Source of the DNA: Paramoeba atlantica
Lineage: Eukaryota; Protista; Discosea
Reading direction: 5' to 3'
NCBI GenBank assembly: GCA_977017575.1
Contig: CDRNVI010000071.1
Span: 186,001 to 250,000 of the forward strand
DNA: 64,000 nt
A program made the translations under genes and the position numbers. Of this stretch, positions 4,337-12,289 are shown piece after piece. The notes below the pieces were generated by a model that saw only the letters and a program-made list of their open reading frames with translations, had not been told where the DNA came from and ran no database searches. The first letter of the stretch is position 1, and every line of letters starts with the position of its first letter.

Positions 4337-7300
4337 TTGTATCATACAGGTAATCCTGCAGAGATTTATGTGGTGAAAACGCGCACTGAACGCGTTTTAG
4401 TCACCTGTTTCTATCCAGCGTCACCAAGAACGTTCTCCTCCATCCAATTTTTGCCATTGCGGTTTTGATATACTATGAAGCTCCCTCTCAGAGCCTTCAC
4501 GGTCATATTGCGCCGGCACTCAGCCACCAGCTCATCATTACCCACAAATAGAGAGTTCAGAGTTCGACCAGCACTGCTTATTTTTCCTCTCGCTCCGACT
4601 TCGAAAACGAGTAGGAAAGTGCTCGGGTTTGTGAGCTTGCGGGAATGGTAGAGATTTGTGTACTTGGCAGTTTTTCGTTCGTGTGCGTAGACAAAATTTT
4701 CCTCCCAGGGGCACGTCAATTCTATAATATACTCCTCCCCGTTGGACAGTTTCACCCACCCATCCGGTCGCAGCTCGGTGTCGAGTTCCGTGAGCCACGG
4801 AGGGGTAGAGCGAAAGTGAGGGAGGTCAAAGTGATATAGACTGGTCCCTTGGAATTTCTGCACAGAGTTTGCGAGGGCTTGTAGCACCATGTTATGTCGC
4901 AGAGTATATCGTCCTTGCTCGAGTGCTTTTCTACACCCGGAGAGAATATGTCGCGCGGTTTGCGTTTCAGTATCGCAGATGGGACACTTGTCGCTTGTGT
5001 GTGTCGATACGCCCCATTTGCGGAGAGACACTCTAGTAGGGAGTGGCGTTTCTGTGAGTACGGAAGCCGTAAATCGTGATAGCGATTCGCTTTTGAGATT
5101 ACATAGGGCGGCAGCGAAGTCCCTCGCGAGGTCTGCTTCCGTCGCTAAGCGGAACCATCTTCCCGCAACTGAAGTGCGCCTTTGCACGGCTTCCGAAAGA
5201 TGCCTCTCATATTCACTGTCGATAAGTCGTCGTACGTTATTGTGAGTTGAACCGAGTATGTCAGTCGGCGGACGAATGTACCCCGCTTTTCTCTTGTTTT
5301 CTTCTCTCCTGATGCGTTCTCGCAGGGCGTGCTGGACATCGGGATCGCGTGATTTCTCCATTTGTTCCACGGCGCTCGCGGTTGAAAGAAGCCATAGTTT
5401 GGATAAGCTCACGAGGTTCCAACCATGCTCGGAGTACAACAGTTCGCTTGTCGCGGATTTTGCTACATTTAACCATTTTCTGATTTCATTTGTAGCGCAT
5501 CGCTGGAGGCGCAGAACGTGGTTAAAAGTCAGACATGAATTGACAACAAAAGAGTAGCGAAGGCGGGAGATAAGGCGGGAGATACCATTATTGTATATCC
5601 AGAGTCGGGCGGGTAGGTCGTGGGCGCTGGAAGATACATGTATGTTGCGTAACCAGGTACGGAGTCGATTGCGTAGCTTTGGGAACAGAATTTTACCATA
5701 CTGGGCACCAGGTGCGAGAGTCATACCCAGGAATGTGCTACCATTATCGCATATTTGAGGAATAGGTGTTGCGTCAATCATTATCTGCGGTCGTCTTGTC
5801 ATGTAGCCTGAGTCTTGAGTCATTGCCATGTGTTGAATCCGACATTTCTTTGCGTTCAATTTCATTCCGATGCCGCCTAGAACTTTGACCAGTACGTTCG
5901 TGGCAATTTGCATTTCCTTTGGTGTGTTCGTGAGTATACTGAGGTCGTCAGCAAAGGCCTTCAGAGAGGTTTCCTTTCCATCCCAAGTGATTCCGTACTG
6001 TGGGCAACTTGAACGGATGAAGCGAAGAACCAATTCCATTGCCAAGTTGAATAAGATCGGCGACAGTGTATCTCCTTGTAATACTCCACGGCCGATCTCG
6101 AGCGACTTCGTAAGGCCTTCAGCACACTTGATTTGAATAGATGCTCCTTTATACAGCGCGCTGATATAGTTAATTAGAATTGGGGAGACACTGGCCCATT
6201 TTAGGGATTGTAACAGTACTGCGTGGGGGATAGATCCGAAAGCGTTCTTGATATCGAATTGTGCCAGTAAGTATTGCCGTTTGTGACGTCGTTGGTGTTC
6301 AAGGAGCTCGCATAAGACTTGTGTATGCTCGACGGTCCCATTCATGTGTGGTAGAAATCCTTTTTGTACTGATGTATCGAGCGCATGAGAATCCAAGGAA
6401 TGTTGAAGGATTCGGTGGCTCAGGATTGAATGGAAAAGTTTCCCTATGCAACTAGTTAAGCTTATCGGTCGCCAATTCTCCATAGTTGATGTAGGACCTC
6501 CTTTGTGTATGAGGCGAGTTACGGCAGATTTCCAGGTGGGGGGACAAACCCCGAATTTAAGGATGTCATTGAATACTTGAGCGATGTGGACAAAGATAGG
6601 GCTACAACGCTTGAGCAGAGCGTTGGATACAGTGTCTGATCCAGGAGCAGCGCCCGAGCGCTTGGAAGATACAGCAGATGCTATCATTTCGGCGTCAATA
6701 TCCGACCATGGTATGTCGATGTCAGGCCGTGGTCCCAAGAACTCGGCGGGGGGTATGCTGTGATTCTCTTCAGGTTTTGACAATGATGCCGCGAAGAAGT
6801 TCTCAACCTCTTGAAGAGGTACTGTAGGGTAAGACGTCTCGGGTTCCTGGATTGGGTCAGTGCGATCTAGGCATTCGCCCGCAGCTGTCCACGGGTTTCT
6901 CTGGAACCGAGTTAATGCCCATCGTCGATCGATTTCCCTCTTCTGTAGATTGGCTTCCTCCACGTACAACTTCAACGCTTTCTCTGCTTCCTTAATTTCT
7001 CCTCGCTGCTTGTTTCTCGCGACCCCCTTCATGAAGGTAAGTGCACGTTTGAGTTGACGAACATGTGTGCGAAGCCTCTTCGTGGTACGTTCGATGGCCA
7101 AGGGCCGCCAAGGGGGGATATTGCCATCTCTACTAACATGAGGTTCCGGGGAAGTGCGTGTATGAGAGAGTTCGTGGTTTACAGCCTGCGTACCGCTCAA
7201 GTTTCCTGTCTCGGATGGCCAGCTAGGGTGATACTGTGGTGATATTATGCTAGCATCGGCAGGAGATGTCCTCGTAAACAAATTCCTGAGTGACCATATT

Positions 7301-8521
7301 CGATTCTGACTGTTTTCTTCGACGATCATGACCCCTGTCTTGCAACATTGGTGTTTGCACTGAGTTTTATTGCTGCATATGTGCCGACACGGGCGACAGT
7401 TGGCCGTGTTTGCTGATATGGCGGACGACGGCGGATGACCGGTTGGCAGTTCCTCATACTGGGCCTCTTCGCTCGGTATGGCATCTGTCGAGACTTGCGG
7501 ATCGGTTTCTATCGATGTGGCTACTGTCGGTGGACTATGTGACCGTGTTAATGGTGACTCCCCGAGGTGCCGTTCTGGTCGAGGATTATCTGTAGCACCC
7601 GTGATGAGGACTCCTATTTTGCAGCACTGGTGCAAACAATTTGTCTTGTCGCGGCACGTATGCTTACAGGGCCTTCTGCCGGGAGCTAGTGAACTGTCTA
7701 TAGCCACGGCTTCCGAAGAGGGAAGAGGGACGCTAGGATGCACAGACCTTTCGGGTTTCACTTTGCAACATACGTGAAGACATGCTGCTTTGTCCCGGCA
7801 TTTATGGGCACAAGGGACACTTGGTTTAGTGGGCGGTAGTTTTGACACCTTGACGGGAGCATCACGGATTCTATATGGCGCGTCGTATGTGACCTCCGGG
7901 CAACGTTGGAGTTGTTCAACGGGTTGGGCCTTACGGGTCACGTGTGATATGCGGAATCGTCGTAAGCCTGGCACGTCACCGCCGCGCAATTTCTTTGTGA
8001 CGGCTTTGCCAAGCGCGTTCGAGGAGGAGTATTCTGTGTCAAGATGCATGTCGGAGTCTGTATAAGCAGAGCTCCAGCTCGTGTGATGAAATGTGCCACT
8101 AAGGTTTCCAATTTCATGGTACTCAACGTACTCGCATGCGTCGTTCTCGATGACATCTTGAGTGGTACACGTTTGTACTATCAGACCATCGCTCCTTTTG
8201 CTTCCCGACTTCAGGGTTTTTCCGAGGGAAGCTTCTGCTGTGTGCGTGCTTGAGAAAAACTCTCGTTCGGTAAGGGTGATGGCTGCGGCGTGCGTGTCGG
8301 GAAAATAGGACCACGAAACGCTATCAGAGGGGCGGATCTTCACTGGCAGCGCACGACTTCGGACGAAGTGAAAGTTCTGGGGGTGTCGCTGCGCGCTGAC
8401 AGGTCCTCGAGGGAGGCCGTCGTGCGCGTGGGGAGCTGGGGGTGTGACATTCGAGACCATGCTCCGAAAGATAAGTTTAGTACAAAGTTAATAAATCAAC
8501 AAGGTACAGAAACTGTATCTT
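4337..8521 (-). mobile_element. Full-length HERO-like RT+RLE non-LTR retrotransposon (copy A) with a 5' spliced-leader fragment
   Basis: Removing 4337-8521 restores the LRR frame (LPESLTYI|YMKCNKLSG). Single long ORF, 36-nt 5' UTR preceded by an SL-like sequence, hairpinned 3' UTR, no clear TSD. Confidence 0.85.
4411..8460 (-). CDS. Non-LTR retrotransposon polyprotein, 1349 aa: 3 Cys/His zinc-binding repeats, RT, CCHC finger, restriction-like endonuclease
   Basis: RT motifs QKGFLPHMNGTVEH, FDIKNAFGS, QGDTLSP, AFADD. CPICDTETQTARHILSGC finger. RLE motifs YTLRHNMVL, RPDGW, IIELTCPWEENFVYAHERK, resembling HERO-clade elements. No stops. Confidence 0.92.
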   Translation of the reverse strand: MVSNVTPPAPHAHDGLPRGPVSAQRHPQNFHFVRSRALPVKIRPSDSVSWSYFPDTHAAAITLTEREFFSSTHTAEASLGKTLKSGSKRSDGLIVQTCTTQDVIENDACEYVEYHEIGNLSGTFHHTSWSSAYTDSDMHLDTEYSSSNALGKAVTKKLRGGDVPGLRRFRISHVTRKAQPVEQLQRCPEVTYDAPYRIRDAPVKVSKLPPTKPSVPCAHKCRDKAACLHVCCKVKPERSVHPSVPLPSSEAVAIDSSLAPGRRPCKHTCRDKTNCLHQCCKIGVLITGATDNPRPERHLGESPLTRSHSPPTVATSIETDPQVSTDAIPSEEAQYEELPTGHPPSSAISANTANCRPCRHICSNKTQCKHQCCKTGVMIVEENSQNRIWSLRNLFTRTSPADASIISPQYHPSWPSETGNLSGTQAVNHELSHTRTSPEPHVSRDGNIPPWRPLAIERTTKRLRTHVRQLKRALTFMKGVARNKQRGEIKEAEKALKLYVEEANLQKREIDRRWALTRFQRNPWTAAGECLDRTDPIQEPETSYPTVPLQEVENFFAASLSKPEENHSIPPAEFLGPRPDIDIPWSDIDAEMIASAVSSKRSGAAPGSDTVSNALLKRCSPIFVHIAQVFNDILKFGVCPPTWKSAVTRLIHKGGPTSTMENWRPISLTSCIGKLFHSILSHRILQHSLDSHALDTSVQKGFLPHMNGTVEHTQVLCELLEHQRRHKRQYLLAQFDIKNAFGSIPHAVLLQSLKWASVSPILINYISALYKGASIQIKCAEGLTKSLEIGRGVLQGDTLSPILFNLAMELVLRFIRSSCPQYGITWDGKETSLKAFADDLSILTNTPKEMQIATNVLVKVLGGIGMKLNAKKCRIQHMAMTQDSGYMTRRPQIMIDATPIPQICDNGSTFLGMTLAPGAQYGKILFPKLRNRLRTWLRNIHVSSSAHDLPARLWIYNNGISRLISRLRYSFVVNSCLTFNHVLRLQRCATNEIRKWLNVAKSATSELLYSEHGWNLVSLSKLWLLSTASAVEQMEKSRDPDVQHALRERIRREENKRKAGYIRPPTDILGSTHNNVRRLIDSEYERHLSEAVQRRTSVAGRWFRLATEADLARDFAAALCNLKSESLSRFTASVLTETPLPTRVSLRKWGVSTHTSDKCPICDTETQTARHILSGCRKALEQGRYTLRHNMVLQALANSVQKFQGTSLYHFDLPHFRSTPPWLTELDTELRPDGWVKLSNGEEYIIELTCPWEENFVYAHERKTAKYTNLYHSRKLTNPSTFLLVFEVGARGKISSAGRTLNSLFVGNDELVAECRRNMTVKALRGSFIVYQNRNGKNWMEENVLGDAG

Positions 8522-8524
8522 TAT
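8497..8524 (-). other. Spliced-leader exon-like sequence joined to the 5' UTR of retroelement A
   Basis: ATAAAGATACAGTTTCTGTACCTTGTTG contains the euglenozoan SL core ACAGTTTCTGTAC and ends in TTG like trypanosomatid SLs. It is followed by non-GT sequence, as in a trans-spliced mRNA. Confidence 0.8.
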
Positions 8525-8590
8525 GTAAGTTAGACTTTCTGGGAGATGGCAGAGATCTACAGTTCGCACAAACTGATTGTCAAAAATATA
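8522..8590 (-). pseudogene. One 23-codon LRR repeat stranded between retroelements B and A
   Basis: Translates YIFDNQFVRTVDLCHLPESLTYI, in register with the repeat resuming at 4336. Confidence 0.75.
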
Positions 8591-9180
8591 TTAATCATGC
8601 AGTTATACTGCAGAGATTAGCCCTAGGTAGGTAAGCACGCCCAAAACGTGCTACTTACTCGGGGATTACCACTTTATTGGAAGCCTTGCACCTCCCACGT
8701 GGGGTTGTCGCGGTGCTGGTAGATAACAAAGCTTCCCCGGAGTGCCCGCTGGACCATTCTCTCCCTGCACTCGGAGGCAAGGCTCTTGCATCCTCCGAAG
8801 AGAGAGTTCAGCGCGCGGGTTGTGGCGTTTAACTTTCCTCTTGCCCGAACTTCAAAAACCAGGTGGAAGGTGGAAGGGTTTTTTAATTTCCTCTGGTTAT
8901 AGATGTGAGAGTATTTACGAATCTTACGCTCGTGTGCGTCCGTGAAGTTTTCTTCCCAAGGGGAAGTCAGCTCAATGATGTATTCCGACCCGTTGTGCAA
9001 CTTCACCCACCCGTCTGGTCTCAATTCAGTTTGTTGCGAGAGCCAGGCGGGAGGGTTCCTGTGGAGGTACAGGTCGAAGTGCGAATGGGCCGCTGATGGT
9101 GATGCTGCTACGGTGTCCGCTAGTGTGAGCAGGATAAGGTCGTGTCGGTAAGTGAATCGTCCCTGACTGAGCGCAATTGG
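8591..9180 (-). mobile_element. 5'-truncated HERO-like element (copy B): endonuclease C-terminus plus 3' UTR
   Basis: Translates ALSQGRFTYRHDLIL...TELRPDGWVKLHNGSEYIIELTSPWEENFTDAHERK, homologous to A. The 3' UTR has the shared terminal hairpin. Confidence 0.85.
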
Positions 9181-9337
9181 GCACCCAAAAAGTTAGCCTA
9201 TGGTCACTTATCGTGACGGGGGGTTTATATACACTTACACTTATAATTTATATACACATATTTGCTACTTTCGCTTATAAGGTCAGTAAAAAAACCTTTC
9301 GAATGTCTCGATTTTTTTTCTTTTGTATACAGCCATT

Positions 9338-9836
9338 CACGTTGTTTATCATGCGCTCTTTGGCGCAGAGATAATCCCCTTAATGCGACGGCCGATATCA
9401 TCGGCACATAATCCGCCCACAACGGATGTCGCCAAAGGGGGTTCGACACGGACTCGGTCGGTAGAGGTGGTCCAGGCAACTCACCACCTCTTTACGCAGC
9501 CGGAGGGGCGCACTGCAACCGACCGCTGCCTCGCGATAATGCGAGGCAGAGTCACGCCCAGTGGTCCTCAAGGGAGGCCACCATGGCGCATAGCTCCCGG
9601 GAAGAGACAGGCGCGAGAAGAAGAAAGCCGGGGAGGGAAGAAAACTCACTCAAGGAGTGAGCCGGGGAGGGGTGAAAAGTCGGAAGTACGTCCCCTACTT
9701 CCACGACAAGAGGGACAGTCCCTGCTAGCCGTCAGCCGGAAACGGGCATTTAAAAGGAAAATGTATGCCCGTTTCCGGGAAAAGAAAGGAAGGGCTAGCA
9801 AAATGTACCAACAAGGTACAGAAACTGTATCTTTAT
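9338..9836 (-). mobile_element. SL-headed, HERO-tailed non-autonomous retroelement (candidate SINE), 499 bp
   Basis: Interrupts one arm of a Tc1 TIR; the intact arm at ~11915-11950 shows the empty site. The 5' end is SL 28 nt + GTAC, the body is a run of hairpins, and the 3' end TATCTC-TGCGC-caaaga-GCGCA-TGAT matches the HERO 3' motif. Confidence 0.75.
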
Positions 9837-10062
9837 ATTAATTATCACTGTTGCGCTGGTAATGTGTGCTAGTAGTGTCGGCATGAGTGTCACCTAATAG
9901 TACCCATAGGTAGTTCACCTCAGTTCGTTCTGCCCAAGAATTAAGAATGAATTTAAAAAAAAAGCATTCGAAAGATTTTTTTGCTACCTAACATAAATAA
10001 AATATAGCATCAAAAAAAAGATAAAAAAGAATTGCCCAAGAGAGTATATGCCCACAAATTTA

Positions 10063-10930
10063 ATACTTTGTATTCCCCCACGCGCCTTCAACACTGCCTT
10101 CATGCGGGCAGGCATGCTGTCCACCTGGGTACGACATACTGAGGCCGGTATGTTCGCCCACTCCTTCTTAACCCTCTCCCACAACTCTCGGACCCCACTT
10201 GGCGGATCATCGTGGTCCGCAAGGCGCCGCTTGAGCTCCCCCAAAACATTCTCGATGGGGTTTAAGTCAGGGGACTGCGGGGGCCACCGCATGACTTCAA
10301 ACCCGGTACCCTGGAGGTGCCGTTGCGCACACCGGCTGGTATGCTTGGGGTCGCTATCCTGTTGGGAGATAACTTTTCCAGGATCCAAGCCCATGCCATC
10401 AATTGATGGGACAAAATTTTCCTGTAAAATCTCGATGTACTGCTCTGCATTCAAGTTCCCTTGAACTAGACGCACATGTCTCACACCACTTCGGGACATA
10501 CACGCCCAAATCATTACATGACCCCCTCCATATTTGACCGTAGGGATCACCCCCTTTTCCCCCAGTTCCTCCCCTGGGGTCCCCCATGTCCATGACTCCC
10601 CCCCGTCTCAAAGCGCCAGATCTTGGTCTCGTCCGACCACACTACTGGCTCTCAATCATGGACTGTCCAGTGCTCATGGGCAGTAGCGTAGTCCATCCGA
10701 AGCTTTCTATGTCGCTTGGACAAGTACGGCTTTCGGACACGCTTCCTTCCCTTGTGTCCGAAGCGTTTCATCGAAACGCGGATGGATTGTGGGACGACAT
10801 CCACAACACCCTCCTGGCGGAGTTGAGAGGAAACCTCGCGCGCAGACTTACCCGAAAACACAAGTCGTCGCAGCGCGTCGTGCGCACGACTCGGAAATCT
10901 TGCGAGGGTGACCCCTCTTTAGCCTGCGAG
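10063..10930 (-). pseudogene. Tc1 DD34E transposase, broken by stop/frameshift
   Basis: HTH segment AREVSSQL...RKPYLSKRHRKLR; catalytic part VKYGGGHVMIWACMS, QQDSDPKH, WPPQSPDLNPIEN. 34 residues lie between the second D and E. Confidence 0.88.
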
Positions 10931-11700: not shown

Positions 11701-12289
11701 TATTTATGGGCATATATTCTCCCGGGCAATTCTTTTTTATCTTTTTTTGATGCAATATTTTATTAATGTTAGGTAGCAAAAAAACCTTTCGAATGCTATT
11801 TTTTTTTAAATTTATTCTTAATTCTTGGGCAGAACGAACTGAGGTGAACTATCTGTGGGTACTATTAGGTGACACTCATGCCTACACTACACTCATGCCT
11901 ACTAGCACACATTACCAGCGCAACAGTGATAATTAATCAATGGCTGTATACAAAAGAAAAAAAATTCGAAACATTCGAACGGTTTTTTTACTGACCTTAT
12001 ATACACTTATATTATTTACACTTATTTGAAGGGTTTTGCAATTTTTAGACCCCCCGCAGCATCTGATTTACCCCCCTGTATACACTTGTGTATACAGATA
12101 ATTATGTGTATATAAACCAGGGGGGTTTATAACCAGGGGGGGTTACTTGAAAGACAATTACTGTTGGTGAAGTCTGTTGTATGCCGTCAGTTAACTGTGA
12201 ATACCGTCTATTGCACTTTACTGCACGTTTTTCGTAGCTTTGCTTTTTTTAGGCTGTCGACCTGGGGCAGAGCAAGTTTTTTCGACCAC

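What the first reader, a model, noticed from the sequence alone, without database searches (positions are those of the whole stretch)
9338..9836. Candidate new SINE class: spliced-leader-RNA head plus HERO-LINE 3' tail
Seen: a 499-bp insert splits one arm of a Tc1 TIR (ccatt|insert|attaatt; the intact arm reads ccattgattaatt). On the minus strand it begins ATAAAGATACAGTTTCTGTACCTTGTTG|GTACA, with TGTACC-ttgtt-GGTACA folding across the junction. It continues through many hairpins (e.g. ccggaaacgggcat...atgcccgtttccgg inside gctagcc/ggctagc) and ends TATCTC-TGCGC-caaaga-GCGCA-TGAT, the motif that ends all three HERO copies. No credible ORF. Established: kinetoplastid SL RNA is exon-TTG|GTA-intron with stem-loop I spanning the donor; SINEs borrow the 3' end of a partner LINE; known SINE heads derive from tRNA, 7SL, 5S, U snRNAs or rRNA. 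Inference: a non-autonomous retroelement whose head is unspliced SL RNA (or an SL-trans-spliced non-coding RNA) and whose tail is read by the HERO RT/RLE. I know of no described SL-RNA-headed SINE, but I could not search.
Basis: partly seen in the sequence, partly recalled or inferred. Interest (0 to 1): 0.95.

Follow-up and report, generated by a model that had tools for sequence, protein, structure and literature searches.

The report
Spliced-leader-headed SINE-like retroposon family
This 499-base non-coding jumping element starts with the last 28 letters of the host's spliced leader and ends in the hairpin that neighbouring R2-like retrotransposons carry. It belongs to a real, young family of about 100 copies, but its head is only part of the leader exon, not a spliced-leader RNA.

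Summary
Window 9338-9836 (minus strand) is a clean 499-bp insertion that replaces one G in a Tc1-like inverted repeat. It has no conserved ORF.

It belongs to a dispersed family of about 94 exact heads in a 45.7-Mb euglenozoan genome, with several subfamilies. Its first 28 nt equal nt 11-38 of the organism's 38-nt spliced-leader (SL) exon. It ends in ATCTC-stem-loop-stem-TGA. That hairpin also closes the RT+CCHC+RLE (R2-like) LINEs nearby, and its stems covary.

The "unspliced SL RNA head" reading is not supported. Only GTA follows the exon in common with the true SL gene. A genuine retrocopy of unspliced SL RNA elsewhere in the genome looks different.

New points:
- 95% of SINE heads start at SL nt ~11, whereas about 90% of other SL-headed units carry the near-full leader.
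- The same short head marks the partner LINE group.
- The nt 10/11 boundary is homologous to the CRE/SLACS/CZAR insertion point.
- The SL core pairs with a conserved internal "anti-SL" segment.

How the 5' end is made remains open, because no usable RNA data exist. Other agents of this scan reached similar conclusions on other DNA of this genome. I class it as a new variant of a known kind, of moderate to high interest.

The parts
9338..9836 (-). One copy (one-unit, 499-bp variant) of the SL-headed non-coding retroposon
   Evidence: Exact empty site in intact Tc1-like repeats. At least 40 related copies with different flanks.
9809..9836 (-). Head: 28 nt identical to SL exon nt 11-38
   Evidence: Equals exon[11-38] of the SL gene in L039, L033 and L044. 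The SL match of true SL-gene contigs ends at 9806, that is after GTA.
9804..9820 (-). Hairpin I: TGTACC / ttgtt / GGTACA, spanning the exon end plus 5 nt
   Evidence: Invariant in 16 copies of 5 subfamilies and in every minimum-free-energy fold.
9715..9722 (-). 'Anti-SL' segment GGGACTGT, predicted to pair with SL core ACAGTTTC (9821-9828)
   Evidence: RNAalifold helix of 8 pairs. At two of these pairs only A/G varies opposite U. The head-body duplex is stronger than dinucleotide shuffles (p 0.008-0.055).
9724..9799 (-). Nested long hairpin: outer stem GCTAGCC/GGCTAGC, inner stem CCGGAAACGGGCAT/ATGCCCGTTTCCGG
   Evidence: The inner stem has an A-U to C-G double change in 5 of 16 copies. The outer stem is rebuilt with other letters in subfamilies B and D.
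9444..9523 (-). ~80-bp unit that is single here and tandemly duplicated (or more) in most copies
   Evidence: Most genome copies match query 1-393 and then 314-495. Copy lengths are 497-499, 556-578 and 726 nt.
9348..9372 (-). 3' terminal hairpin ATCTC-TGCGC-caaaga-GCGCA-TGAT
   Evidence: Eleven versions in SINE subfamilies and LINEs, with covarying stem positions 2-5.
9338..9347 (-). Short variable tail (AAAC AA...), no poly(A)
   Evidence: Tails differ between copies: AAACAAC, AAACAAACAAAC, and a repeated TGATAAACAA.
9276..9337 (+). Outer part of the left Tc1-like terminal repeat, split off by the insert
   Evidence: Inverted-repeat pairs I4 and I7 with 11899-12001. Intact arms shown.
9837..10027 (+). 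Remainder of the left Tc1-like terminal repeat
   Evidence: The DDE_3 transposase fragment at 9984-10550 lies on the minus strand.
4341..8524 (-). Candidate partner LINE. Head SL nt 11-38 (8497-8524), 27-nt UTR, ORF 4411-8460 (RT, CCHC, RLE), 3' hairpin 4341-4365. Its true 3' end lies a little beyond 4341.

Best explanation
This is one copy of a young, non-coding, non-autonomous retroposon family (SINE-like) of a kinetoplastid- or diplonemid-type euglenozoan.

Shown: its RNA has three modules.
- A 5' hallmark made of spliced-leader exon nt 11-38.
- A conserved, folded ~270-nt 5' domain in which the SL core is paired with an internal anti-SL segment.
- A 3' terminal hairpin, ATCTC-stem-loop-stem-TGA.
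The same hairpin ends a diverse group of R2-supergroup LINEs (RT + CCHC + restriction-like endonuclease), many with intact ORFs. The group member in this window, and three others I could cross-reference, also start at SL nt 11.

Inferred mechanism:
- The element is transcribed by read-through inside Pol II polycistrons.
- Its RNA is taken by the LINE protein through the 3' hairpin.
- It is copied by target-primed reverse transcription, without poly(A) and with no or tiny target changes.

Inferred origin of the head: the SL piece came from an RNA that had received the leader by trans-splicing, not from an unspliced SL RNA. It has since behaved as a fixed 5' hallmark of this LINE/SINE partnership, comparable in role to Pr77 of ingi/L1Tc with RIME/NARTc.

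Why the 5' end falls at nt 11 is not settled.
For: Family and mobility:
- 94 exact heads.
- At least 40 near-full copies at 85-99% identity with unrelated flanks.
- A precise empty site.
- Insertions into (TG)n next to a LINE tail, and head-to-tail pairs.

Head is the exon only:
- 28/28 identity to SL nt 11-38, then no similarity to the intron.
- LINE heads are SL + short UTR + ATG, like trans-spliced mRNAs.
- A variant on contig C88 (locus L049) joins the SL directly after the AG of ...TTTTGCTAG|CCCTTC, and it again starts at nt 11.

Partner LINEs:
- The hairpin has 11 covarying versions shared by SINE subfamilies and LINEs. There are 4 in the window against 0.14 expected.
- The LINE protein aligns with R2 from the RT through the CCHC and RLE motifs.
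- At least 122 LINE C-termini, many within open frames of 1500-1860 codons.

Shared short head:
- 89/94 SINE heads lack SL nt 7-10, against about 28/345 of other SL-headed units.
- The short SL+A heads at C7:56504, C14:390774 and C14:212580 and at window 8524 each lie 3.6-4.8 kb upstream of an RLE-LINE C-terminus.

Conserved fold.
Against: - No RNA evidence. The runs that hold the element are contigs of unknown kind, and the one possible RNA run shows SL words only.
- The copies end their SL piece in TG, not AG, so they cannot be re-spliced at the same junction. A trans-spliced origin therefore needs a source gene with an AG acceptor, or a single founding event. The one candidate (C194:40396, AG|GTACATTTTGCTA without SL upstream) could not be read.
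- The body starts with GTACA, which both looks like a 5' splice site and completes the SL stem-loop. The chance is roughly 1/64 for GTA and about 1/256 with the two further pairing letters.
- Five SINE copies carry longer SL pieces, so the RNA sometimes has, or regains, nt 3-10.
- Only the terminal hairpin, not a longer 3' region, is shared with the LINEs I could read. No LINE with the SINE's own stem (TGCGC/GCGCA) was found.
Confidence: 0.62

Rival explanations
1. The head derives from the SL RNA gene or transcript itself (the first reader's version, or co-transcription from an SL promoter after insertion just behind the 5' splice site). On this reading the GTA and stem-loop I are inherited from SL RNA, and the element is an SL-RNA-headed SINE in the strict sense.
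For: - GTA follows the exon as in the true gene.
- GTACA restores all six pairs of the stem that GTATG forms, partly through G-U pairs, in the real SL RNA.
- A U-rich single-stranded ACAUUUUGC followed by a stem-loop resembles an Sm-site layout (read from the sequence, not tested).
- Unspliced SL RNA is retrocopied in this genome (L037).
Against: - Beyond +3 there is no similarity to the intron, although the exon part is 100% identical.
- The head lacks nt 1-10 in 95% of copies.
- No SINE-type head sits behind an SL promoter. Flanks differ in every independent copy.
- The LINEs with the same short head continue with ATTTATT or AATTATT, not GTA.
Confidence: 0.12
2. The 28-nt piece reflects the ancestral SL-gene specificity of the LINE endonuclease, not only RNA processing. 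Its 5' boundary is the CRE/SLACS/CZAR cut site. Either SL-headed cDNA or duplex is clipped there by the element's own RLE at integration, or the hallmark descends from target-site sequence of an SL-gene-resident ancestor.
For: - The boundary lies 28 nt from the exon's 3' end and 8 nt before the conserved ACAGTTTCTGTAC block. This is exactly homologous to 'between nt 11 and 12' of the 39-nt trypanosomatid SL, where CZAR and SLACS insert (PMC5814959; SL table).
- The short head is specific to this RLE-LINE group and its SINE, while other SL-headed units keep the near-full leader.
- If the C88 variant is a fresh splice, it was truncated at nt 11 again.
Against: - The coincidence has odds of only about 1 in 38, or about 1 in 13 if +/-1 nt is allowed.
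- Insertion sites show no SL-like target or consensus.
- CRE-clade membership of these LINEs is untested, and the nearest named relatives are R2-like.
- In CRE elements the downstream SL part lies 3' of the element, not at its 5' end.
Confidence: 0.15
3. The element RNA is a working SL-RNA mimic: a 28-nt mini-exon, a 5' splice site in stem-loop I and an Sm-like site. It can donate a short leader in trans-splicing, and the short heads on the partner LINEs come from it.
For: - Layout of the first ~45 nt.
- LINE heads start at the same nt 11.
Against: - No RNA data, and no mRNA contig with a 28-nt leader was seen.
- The SL core is predicted to be locked in a helix with the anti-SL segment.
- An earlier follow-up in this scan found nothing supporting leader donation (s1-369773).
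Confidence: 0.04

Closest known systems
RIME/ingi and NARTc/L1Tc (with SIDER/DIRE) of trypanosomatids, which share the Pr77 5' hallmark
   Same: Kinetoplastid LINEs and their short non-coding dependants share a short conserved 5' hallmark (Pr77, 77-79 nt) as well as their 3' ends. They live in genomes with polycistronic Pol II transcription (PMC1874656, PMC8190864, PMC5814959).
   Different: - Here the shared hallmark is 28 nt of the host's own spliced leader, not Pr77.
- The LINE is of the RLE/R2 type, not the APE-type ingi clade.
- The tail is a hairpin without poly(A).
- The SINE is not an internal-deletion derivative of the LINE copies I could compare.
Stringent LINE/SINE pairs that share a 3' stem-loop, and non-autonomous dependants of R2 (from my own knowledge, e.g. 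UnaL2/UnaSINE1 of eel and the R2 'SIDE' elements of Drosophila)
   Same: A non-coding element carries the terminal 3' structure that the partner's reverse transcriptase recognises. There is no poly(A), and integration follows the partner's pattern.
   Different: Canonical SINEs have a Pol III head (tRNA, 7SL, 5S), and the R2 dependants keep R2's 5' ribozyme and rDNA target. This element has an SL-exon head, no detectable ribozyme or tRNA-like part and dispersed targets.
Retrogenes with relict spliced leaders in dinoflagellates
   Same: DNA copies of the SL at the 5' end of retrocopied units show reverse transcription of trans-spliced RNA (PMC6050394, PMC5585692).
   Different: Those are protein-coding retrogenes whose relicts are truncated at an internal AG by re-splicing. 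Here a dedicated non-coding mobile family and its LINE carry the piece. The truncation point (after CG, nt 10/11) is not an AG.
CRE clade (SLACS, CZAR, CRE1/2): SL-gene-specific RLE retrotransposons
   Same: RLE-type LINEs of kinetoplastids tied to the spliced leader. Their insertion point (nt 11/12) is homologous to the 5' boundary of the SL piece here (PMC5814959, PMC12278014).
   Different: CRE elements sit inside SL genes. These elements and the SINE are dispersed (Tc1 repeat, microsatellites, genes) and carry the downstream SL part at their own 5' end.
TE transcripts that receive spliced leaders (Hydra)
   Same: About 30% of TE Iso-Seq reads carry an SL, so mobile elements do use host trans-splicing (PMC12220107).
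   Different: That was observed at the RNA level only. No SL is fixed in the DNA copies, and no SINE is involved.

Membership tests
SINE (canonical) | Short, non-coding, dispersed, many copies with different flanks | tested here: met
   497-726 nt. No conserved ORF. 94 exact heads and at least 40 near-full copies with unrelated flanks.
SINE (canonical) | Head derived from a Pol III transcript (tRNA, 7SL, 5S) with an internal promoter | tested here: not met
   No tRNA. No Rfam family at E<=10 other than chance miRNA hits. The head is SL exon nt 11-38.
SINE (canonical) | 3' end shared with a partner LINE | tested here: met
   The terminal ATCTC-stem-loop-stem-TGA hairpin is shared with RLE LINEs, with covarying stems. 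Only about 25 nt are shared.
SINE (canonical) | Target-site duplications | tested here: not met
   The window copy replaces 1 bp with no duplication. Of 18 sites listed, only L026 shows an 11-bp repeat. This is compatible with R2-type integration.
SL RNA gene or retrocopy of unspliced SL RNA | Full exon (nt 1-38) followed by the SL intron | tested here: not met
   nt 1-10 are absent in 95% of copies. Intron similarity is at chance beyond GTA. Contrast L037, a true SL RNA retrocopy.
SL RNA gene or retrocopy of unspliced SL RNA | SL promoter upstream and tandem array with 5S rRNA | tested here: not met
   True genes have a constant upstream sequence and 5S genes. SINE flanks all differ.
Retrocopy of a trans-spliced RNA | SL ends exactly at the exon's 3' end and is followed by unrelated sequence | tested here: met
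   The boundary is at nt 38, with a 3-nt ambiguity (GTA). Partner LINEs read SL|ATTTATT... then ATG.
Retrocopy of a trans-spliced RNA | A source locus with an AG acceptor in front of the body | tested here: inconclusive
   One place reads AG|GTACATTTTGCTA without SL upstream (C194:40396). It could not be fetched, and a chance or truncated copy is not excluded.
CRE clade insertion (SLACS/CZAR/CRE) | Inserted in SL genes between nt 11 and 12 | tested here: not met
   The copies lie in a Tc1 repeat, in (TG)n and at other sites. Only the position of the SL boundary is homologous.
HERO clade (partner LINE) | Phylogenetic placement of RT/RLE with HERO reference elements | not testable with these tools
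   No labelled HERO, CRE or NeSL references could be obtained. Shown here: RT + CCHC + RLE, best solved relatives R2 (E 1.8e-34), named relatives R2-like.
Pr77-type kinetoplastid retroposons (RIME/NARTc/SIDER) | Pr77 hallmark at the 5' end and an A-rich tail | tested here: not met
   The 5' end is the SL 28-mer. The tail is hairpin + AAAC-type repeats without poly(A). Pr77 itself was not searched, because no reference sequence was at hand.

The most novel reading that the evidence does not exclude
The 28-nt SL piece is a selected, heritable 5' module of an R2-like LINE/SINE partnership, not a passive fossil. It is folded against an internal anti-SL segment. Its 5' end is set at the ancient CRE/SLACS cut site because the LINE's restriction-like endonuclease (or another SL-binding part of the protein) still recognises the spliced-leader sequence. 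On this reading, an SL-gene-specific retrotransposon lineage escaped its target by carrying the recognised half-site on its own RNA, and a non-coding parasite copied both ends.
Probability: 0.15. Interest if true: 0.85.

Novelty: new variant of a known kind. Interest (0 to 1): 0.6.

Why it matters
Known SINE heads come from Pol III transcripts. In organisms that transcribe almost everything as Pol II polycistrons, it has been unclear how short parasitic retroposons obtain a defined 5' end.

Here a LINE group and its non-coding dependant share a piece of the host's spliced leader as their common 5' hallmark, and they share a covarying 3' hairpin. I found no description of an SL-headed SINE in the searchable literature.

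The sharp difference between short heads (this partnership) and near-full heads (other retroelements of the same genome) needs a mechanism. So does the match of the boundary with the CRE/SLACS insertion point. Together they make testable how R2-type elements finish their 5' ends, and whether SL-gene specificity and SL-headedness are linked.

The family is young and the LINEs have intact ORFs, so experiments are feasible.

Tried and rejected
- RNA evidence. The only runs holding the element are Logan contigs of unknown kind. The possible RNA run (X6) shows SL words only. No starts, ends or strand can be read from them.
- Known RNA families. Nothing reached gathering score in the window. At E<=10 only chance miRNA-like hits appeared on the SINE and on the LINE 5' end, with no HDV-like or other ribozyme. 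No tRNA was found.
- Coding potential. The antisense 172-codon frame has no Pfam hit, is not conserved, and is explained by composition.
- SL intron homology. Rejected.
- The SINE as the 3' UTR of a LINE. Several LINE ORF ends lie 90-210 nt upstream of SINE heads. In L040, however, the LINE has its own complete hairpin tail followed by (TG)n, and the SINE is a separate insertion inside the microsatellite.
- SINE copies in SL arrays. These are 5'-truncated, antisense passengers next to a (GA)n tract, not site-specific.
- Relatives elsewhere. The conserved 20-mer of the body gave 0 metagenome hits. The SL+GTA 23-mer gave one contig, which holds a true SL gene with a slightly different intron.
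- Anti-SL pairing in the LINE 5' UTR. A 12-nt complement with one bulge is visible, but it is not stronger than shuffles by energy.
- Clade of the LINE (HERO, R2 or CRE). Could not be resolved.
The candidate source locus C194:40396 and further LINE tails could therefore not be read, and I did not try to get them by other routes.

Full report
**1. What is at the coordinates**

On the minus strand, window 9836-9338 reads: the 28-mer ATAAAGATACAGTTTCTGTACCTTGTTG, then GTACATTTTGCTAGCC..., a GC-rich body with nested hairpins, and finally ATCTC-TGCGC-caaaga-GCGCA-TGAT-AAACAACGTG.

The flanks are one arm of a Tc1-like terminal inverted repeat. Intact arms, including this copy's own right arm and three other copies, read cagccatt-G-attaatt. 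Contigs of three public runs join 9337 to 9837 with a single G between. The insert is therefore exactly 499 bp. It replaces one base pair and makes no target-site duplication.

The long antisense open frame has no Pfam match, shifts or breaks in other copies, and is within the composition expectation in other subfamilies. No tRNA and no Rfam family is present.

**2. It is a family**

The genome is 45.7 Mb in 248 contigs. It holds at least 40 near-full copies at 85-99% identity and 94 exact SL(13-38)+GGTAC heads.

- Flanks differ between independent copies. Some loci are duplicated pairs, such as L007/L012 and L010/L013, so the number of independent events is lower than the number of places.
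- Most copies carry a tandem duplication of an ~80-bp unit, element nt 314-393. The window copy is one of three one-unit copies.
- At least five subfamilies (A-E) share a conserved 5' module of ~300 nt and a 3' module. The middle part differs.
- 5' truncated copies occur, for example L019, which starts at SL nt ~22.
- Copies lie in a (TG)n tract beside a LINE tail, head-to-tail with each other, and as truncated antisense passengers in the SL/5S repeat.

**3. The head**

The organism's true SL RNA genes read AACTTTAACGATAAAGATACAGTTTCTGTACCTTGTTG|GTATGAGAAGCTTCG.... They share a constant upstream sequence and sit in arrays with antisense 5S rRNA genes. A metagenome contig carries the same exon with a slightly different intron. 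The ACAGTTTCTGTAC core places the organism among kinetoplastid- or diplonemid-type euglenozoans.

The element's 28-mer is exactly exon nt 11-38. After the exon, only GTA is shared with the intron:
- 13 of the next 60 nt are identical.
- The best local alignment of the intron to the whole body scores 19, against 16.7 +/- 2.2 for shuffles (p=0.17).

A genuine retrocopy of unspliced SL RNA exists at L037. It runs from SL nt 3 through the true intron to about nt 109 and then into an A-run. That is what an 'unspliced SL RNA head' looks like here, and the element is not like it.

Even so, GTACA completes a perfect 6-bp stem with TGTACC of the exon. That stem is the counterpart of SL stem-loop I, so some doubt remains.

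**4. The tail and the partner**

The motif ATCTC-stem-loop-stem-TGA occurs four times in the window, against 0.14 expected. Each occurrence is at the 3' end of a retroelement.

Across the loci read there are 11 versions. Stem position 1 is always T-A. Positions 2-5 change on both sides while keeping the pair.

The LINE at 4341-8524 has the following layout:
- head of SL nt 11-38
- 27-nt UTR
- 1349-aa ORF with an RT domain (RVT_1, E 9e-31)
- a region that aligns with solved R2 proteins from the RT through the CCHC finger and the RHN / PD / E / K-KY motifs of the restriction-like endonuclease

Named sequence relatives are R2-like. 'HERO' could not be tested.

The genome has at least 122 C-terminal matches at 41-100% identity, many inside open frames of 1500-1860 codons. 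Potentially active partners therefore exist.

The tails after the hairpin are short AAAC-type repeats, never poly(A).

**5. The 5' boundary**

Among SINE heads, only 5 of 94 carry SL nt 7-10 upstream. Among SL-headed units that continue with A (LINE- or mRNA-like), 317 of 345 do.

In the listed contigs C1-C18:
- The three short heads preceded by C or T (C7:56504, C14:390774, C14:212580) each lie 3.6-4.8 kb upstream of an RLE-LINE C-terminus. The window LINE head at 8524 has the same layout.
- None of the ~100 listed long heads lies that way.

The nt-11 start is thus a signature of this LINE group and its SINE, not a general property of reverse transcription of SL-capped RNA in this cell.

The long-headed units are often preceded by A-runs or by partial 5' pieces of the SL. 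Earlier follow-ups in this scan read the A-runs as target sites.

The boundary lies 28 nt from the exon's 3' end and 8 nt before the conserved core. It is therefore homologous to the point 'between nt 11 and 12' where CZAR and SLACS insert in trypanosome SL genes. By position alone this is a coincidence of about 1 in 38, and I treat it as a lead.

Five SINE copies with longer SL pieces, where about 0.4 would be expected by chance flank matches, show that the template sometimes has or regains nt 3-10. This could happen through a full-length SL on the RNA, or through template switching within the 28-nt homology.

**6. Evidence bearing on trans-splicing**

- LINE heads have mRNA layout.
- The C88 variant joins the SL directly after the AG of ...TTTTGCTAG|CCCTTC and again starts at nt 11. 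This is either a fresh splice at an internal acceptor or a 14-nt deletion that happens to end at AG.
- The copies themselves end their SL in TG, so they cannot be re-spliced at the same junction.
- One place, C194:40396, reads AG|GTACATTTTGCTA with no SL upstream. It could be the source gene or a truncated copy.

**7. Fold**

In all subfamilies the minimum-energy and consensus folds have three elements:
- SL ACAGTTTC (element nt 9-16) paired with GRRACTGT (nt 115-122). The A/G variation lies opposite U.
- Hairpin I.
- A long hairpin whose inner stem shows an A-U to C-G double change in 5 of 16 copies, and whose outer stem is rebuilt with other letters in subfamilies B and D.

The head-body duplex beats dinucleotide shuffles at p = 0.008-0.055 per subfamily. 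These tests are not independent of each other.

The LINE's 5' UTR also contains a 12-nt complement to SL nt 13-25 with one bulge, but its energy is not above shuffles.

**8. Reading**

Shown:
- a mobile, non-coding family
- an SL-exon piece at the 5' end
- a covarying hairpin shared with RLE LINEs
- a short-head signature shared with that LINE group
- no SL-intron content

Inferred:
- mobilisation by these LINEs through the hairpin
- origin of the head from a trans-spliced RNA
- a structural role for the SL piece

Open:
- how the 5' end at nt 11 is produced

**9. Relation to earlier work of this scan**

The same family and the same LINE/SINE pairing were noted and followed up on other windows of this genome (s1-369756, s1-369773, s1-369839, s1-369846, s1-381670). 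My tests were made independently on this copy and agree with them.

What I add:
- the exact empty site
- the count contrast between short and long heads and its link to the LINE group
- the homology of the boundary to the CRE insertion point
- the SL/anti-SL helix
- the true SL RNA retrocopy as a contrast
- the C194 lead

**10. Literature**

I found TE transcripts that receive SLs (Hydra, PMC12220107), SL relicts on dinoflagellate retrogenes (PMC6050394, PMC5585692), Pr77-sharing LINE/SINE-like pairs (PMC1874656, PMC8190864) and SL-gene-specific CRE elements (PMC5814959, PMC12278014). I found no SL-headed SINE. No paper holds this SL sequence.

Noticed in passing
L037 (G000:C6:26300-27900), minus strand, around locus position 790: Retrocopy of the unspliced SL RNA. 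Homology to the SL gene starts at exon nt 3 with no promoter, runs through the true intron to about nt 109, and is followed by A6 and a 22-bp tandem repeat. This gives the likely 3' end of the SL RNA.
   Followed up: partly
G000:C194:40396-40410, minus strand: AGGTACATTTTGCTA: the start of the SINE body preceded by AG and not by the SL (more than 3 mismatches in the 12 nt upstream). It is either a candidate source gene with a splice acceptor or a truncated copy. It could not be fetched.
   Followed up: partly
L063-L082; e.g. G000:C1:9752/14845/19938/25030 and C18:35321-43666: Hundreds of units begin with a near-full SL (nt 1-5 to 38) plus a short pyrimidine-rich UTR and ATG. Many lie directly behind A-runs. 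Some form tandem arrays with periods of 5093 and 2087 bp.
   Followed up: partly
L066, L068, L075, L077, L079: Partial 5' pieces of the SL, ending at nt 13-17, lie just upstream of a full SL head. They look like reverse-transcriptase template jumps between SL-bearing RNAs.
   Followed up: no
L039 (G000:C11:1-7500), L044, L033: SL RNA genes alternate with antisense 5S rRNA genes. Each long repeat also holds a 5'-truncated antisense SINE next to a long (GA)n tract. Basic SL spacing is 297 bp in places.
   Followed up: partly
L040:610-1590 (G000:C12:566610-567590): A LINE with its own hairpin tail (ATCTC-TAGTGA-tata-TCACTA-TGAT) runs into a long (TG)n tract, and a subfamily-B SINE is inserted inside that microsatellite. 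This suggests microsatellite or tail-proximal targeting.
   Followed up: partly
window 8594-8617 (minus) and 8525-8593: The 3' hairpin of another, truncated LINE ends 70 nt upstream of the SL head of the full-length LINE. The elements are stacked nearly head-to-tail.
   Followed up: no
L026:2081-2200, and window 8468-8479: The 5' UTRs of two short-headed LINE-like units contain complements to the SL core: AACTGTAT and GGTAC in L026, and AAACTTATCTTT in the window LINE. This echoes the anti-SL segment of the SINE.
   Followed up: partly
L083 (metagenome contig Ga0316204_10168667), positions 1-60: An environmental contig carries an SL gene with the identical exon but a diverged intron. A relative of this organism therefore occurs in that sample.
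   Followed up: no
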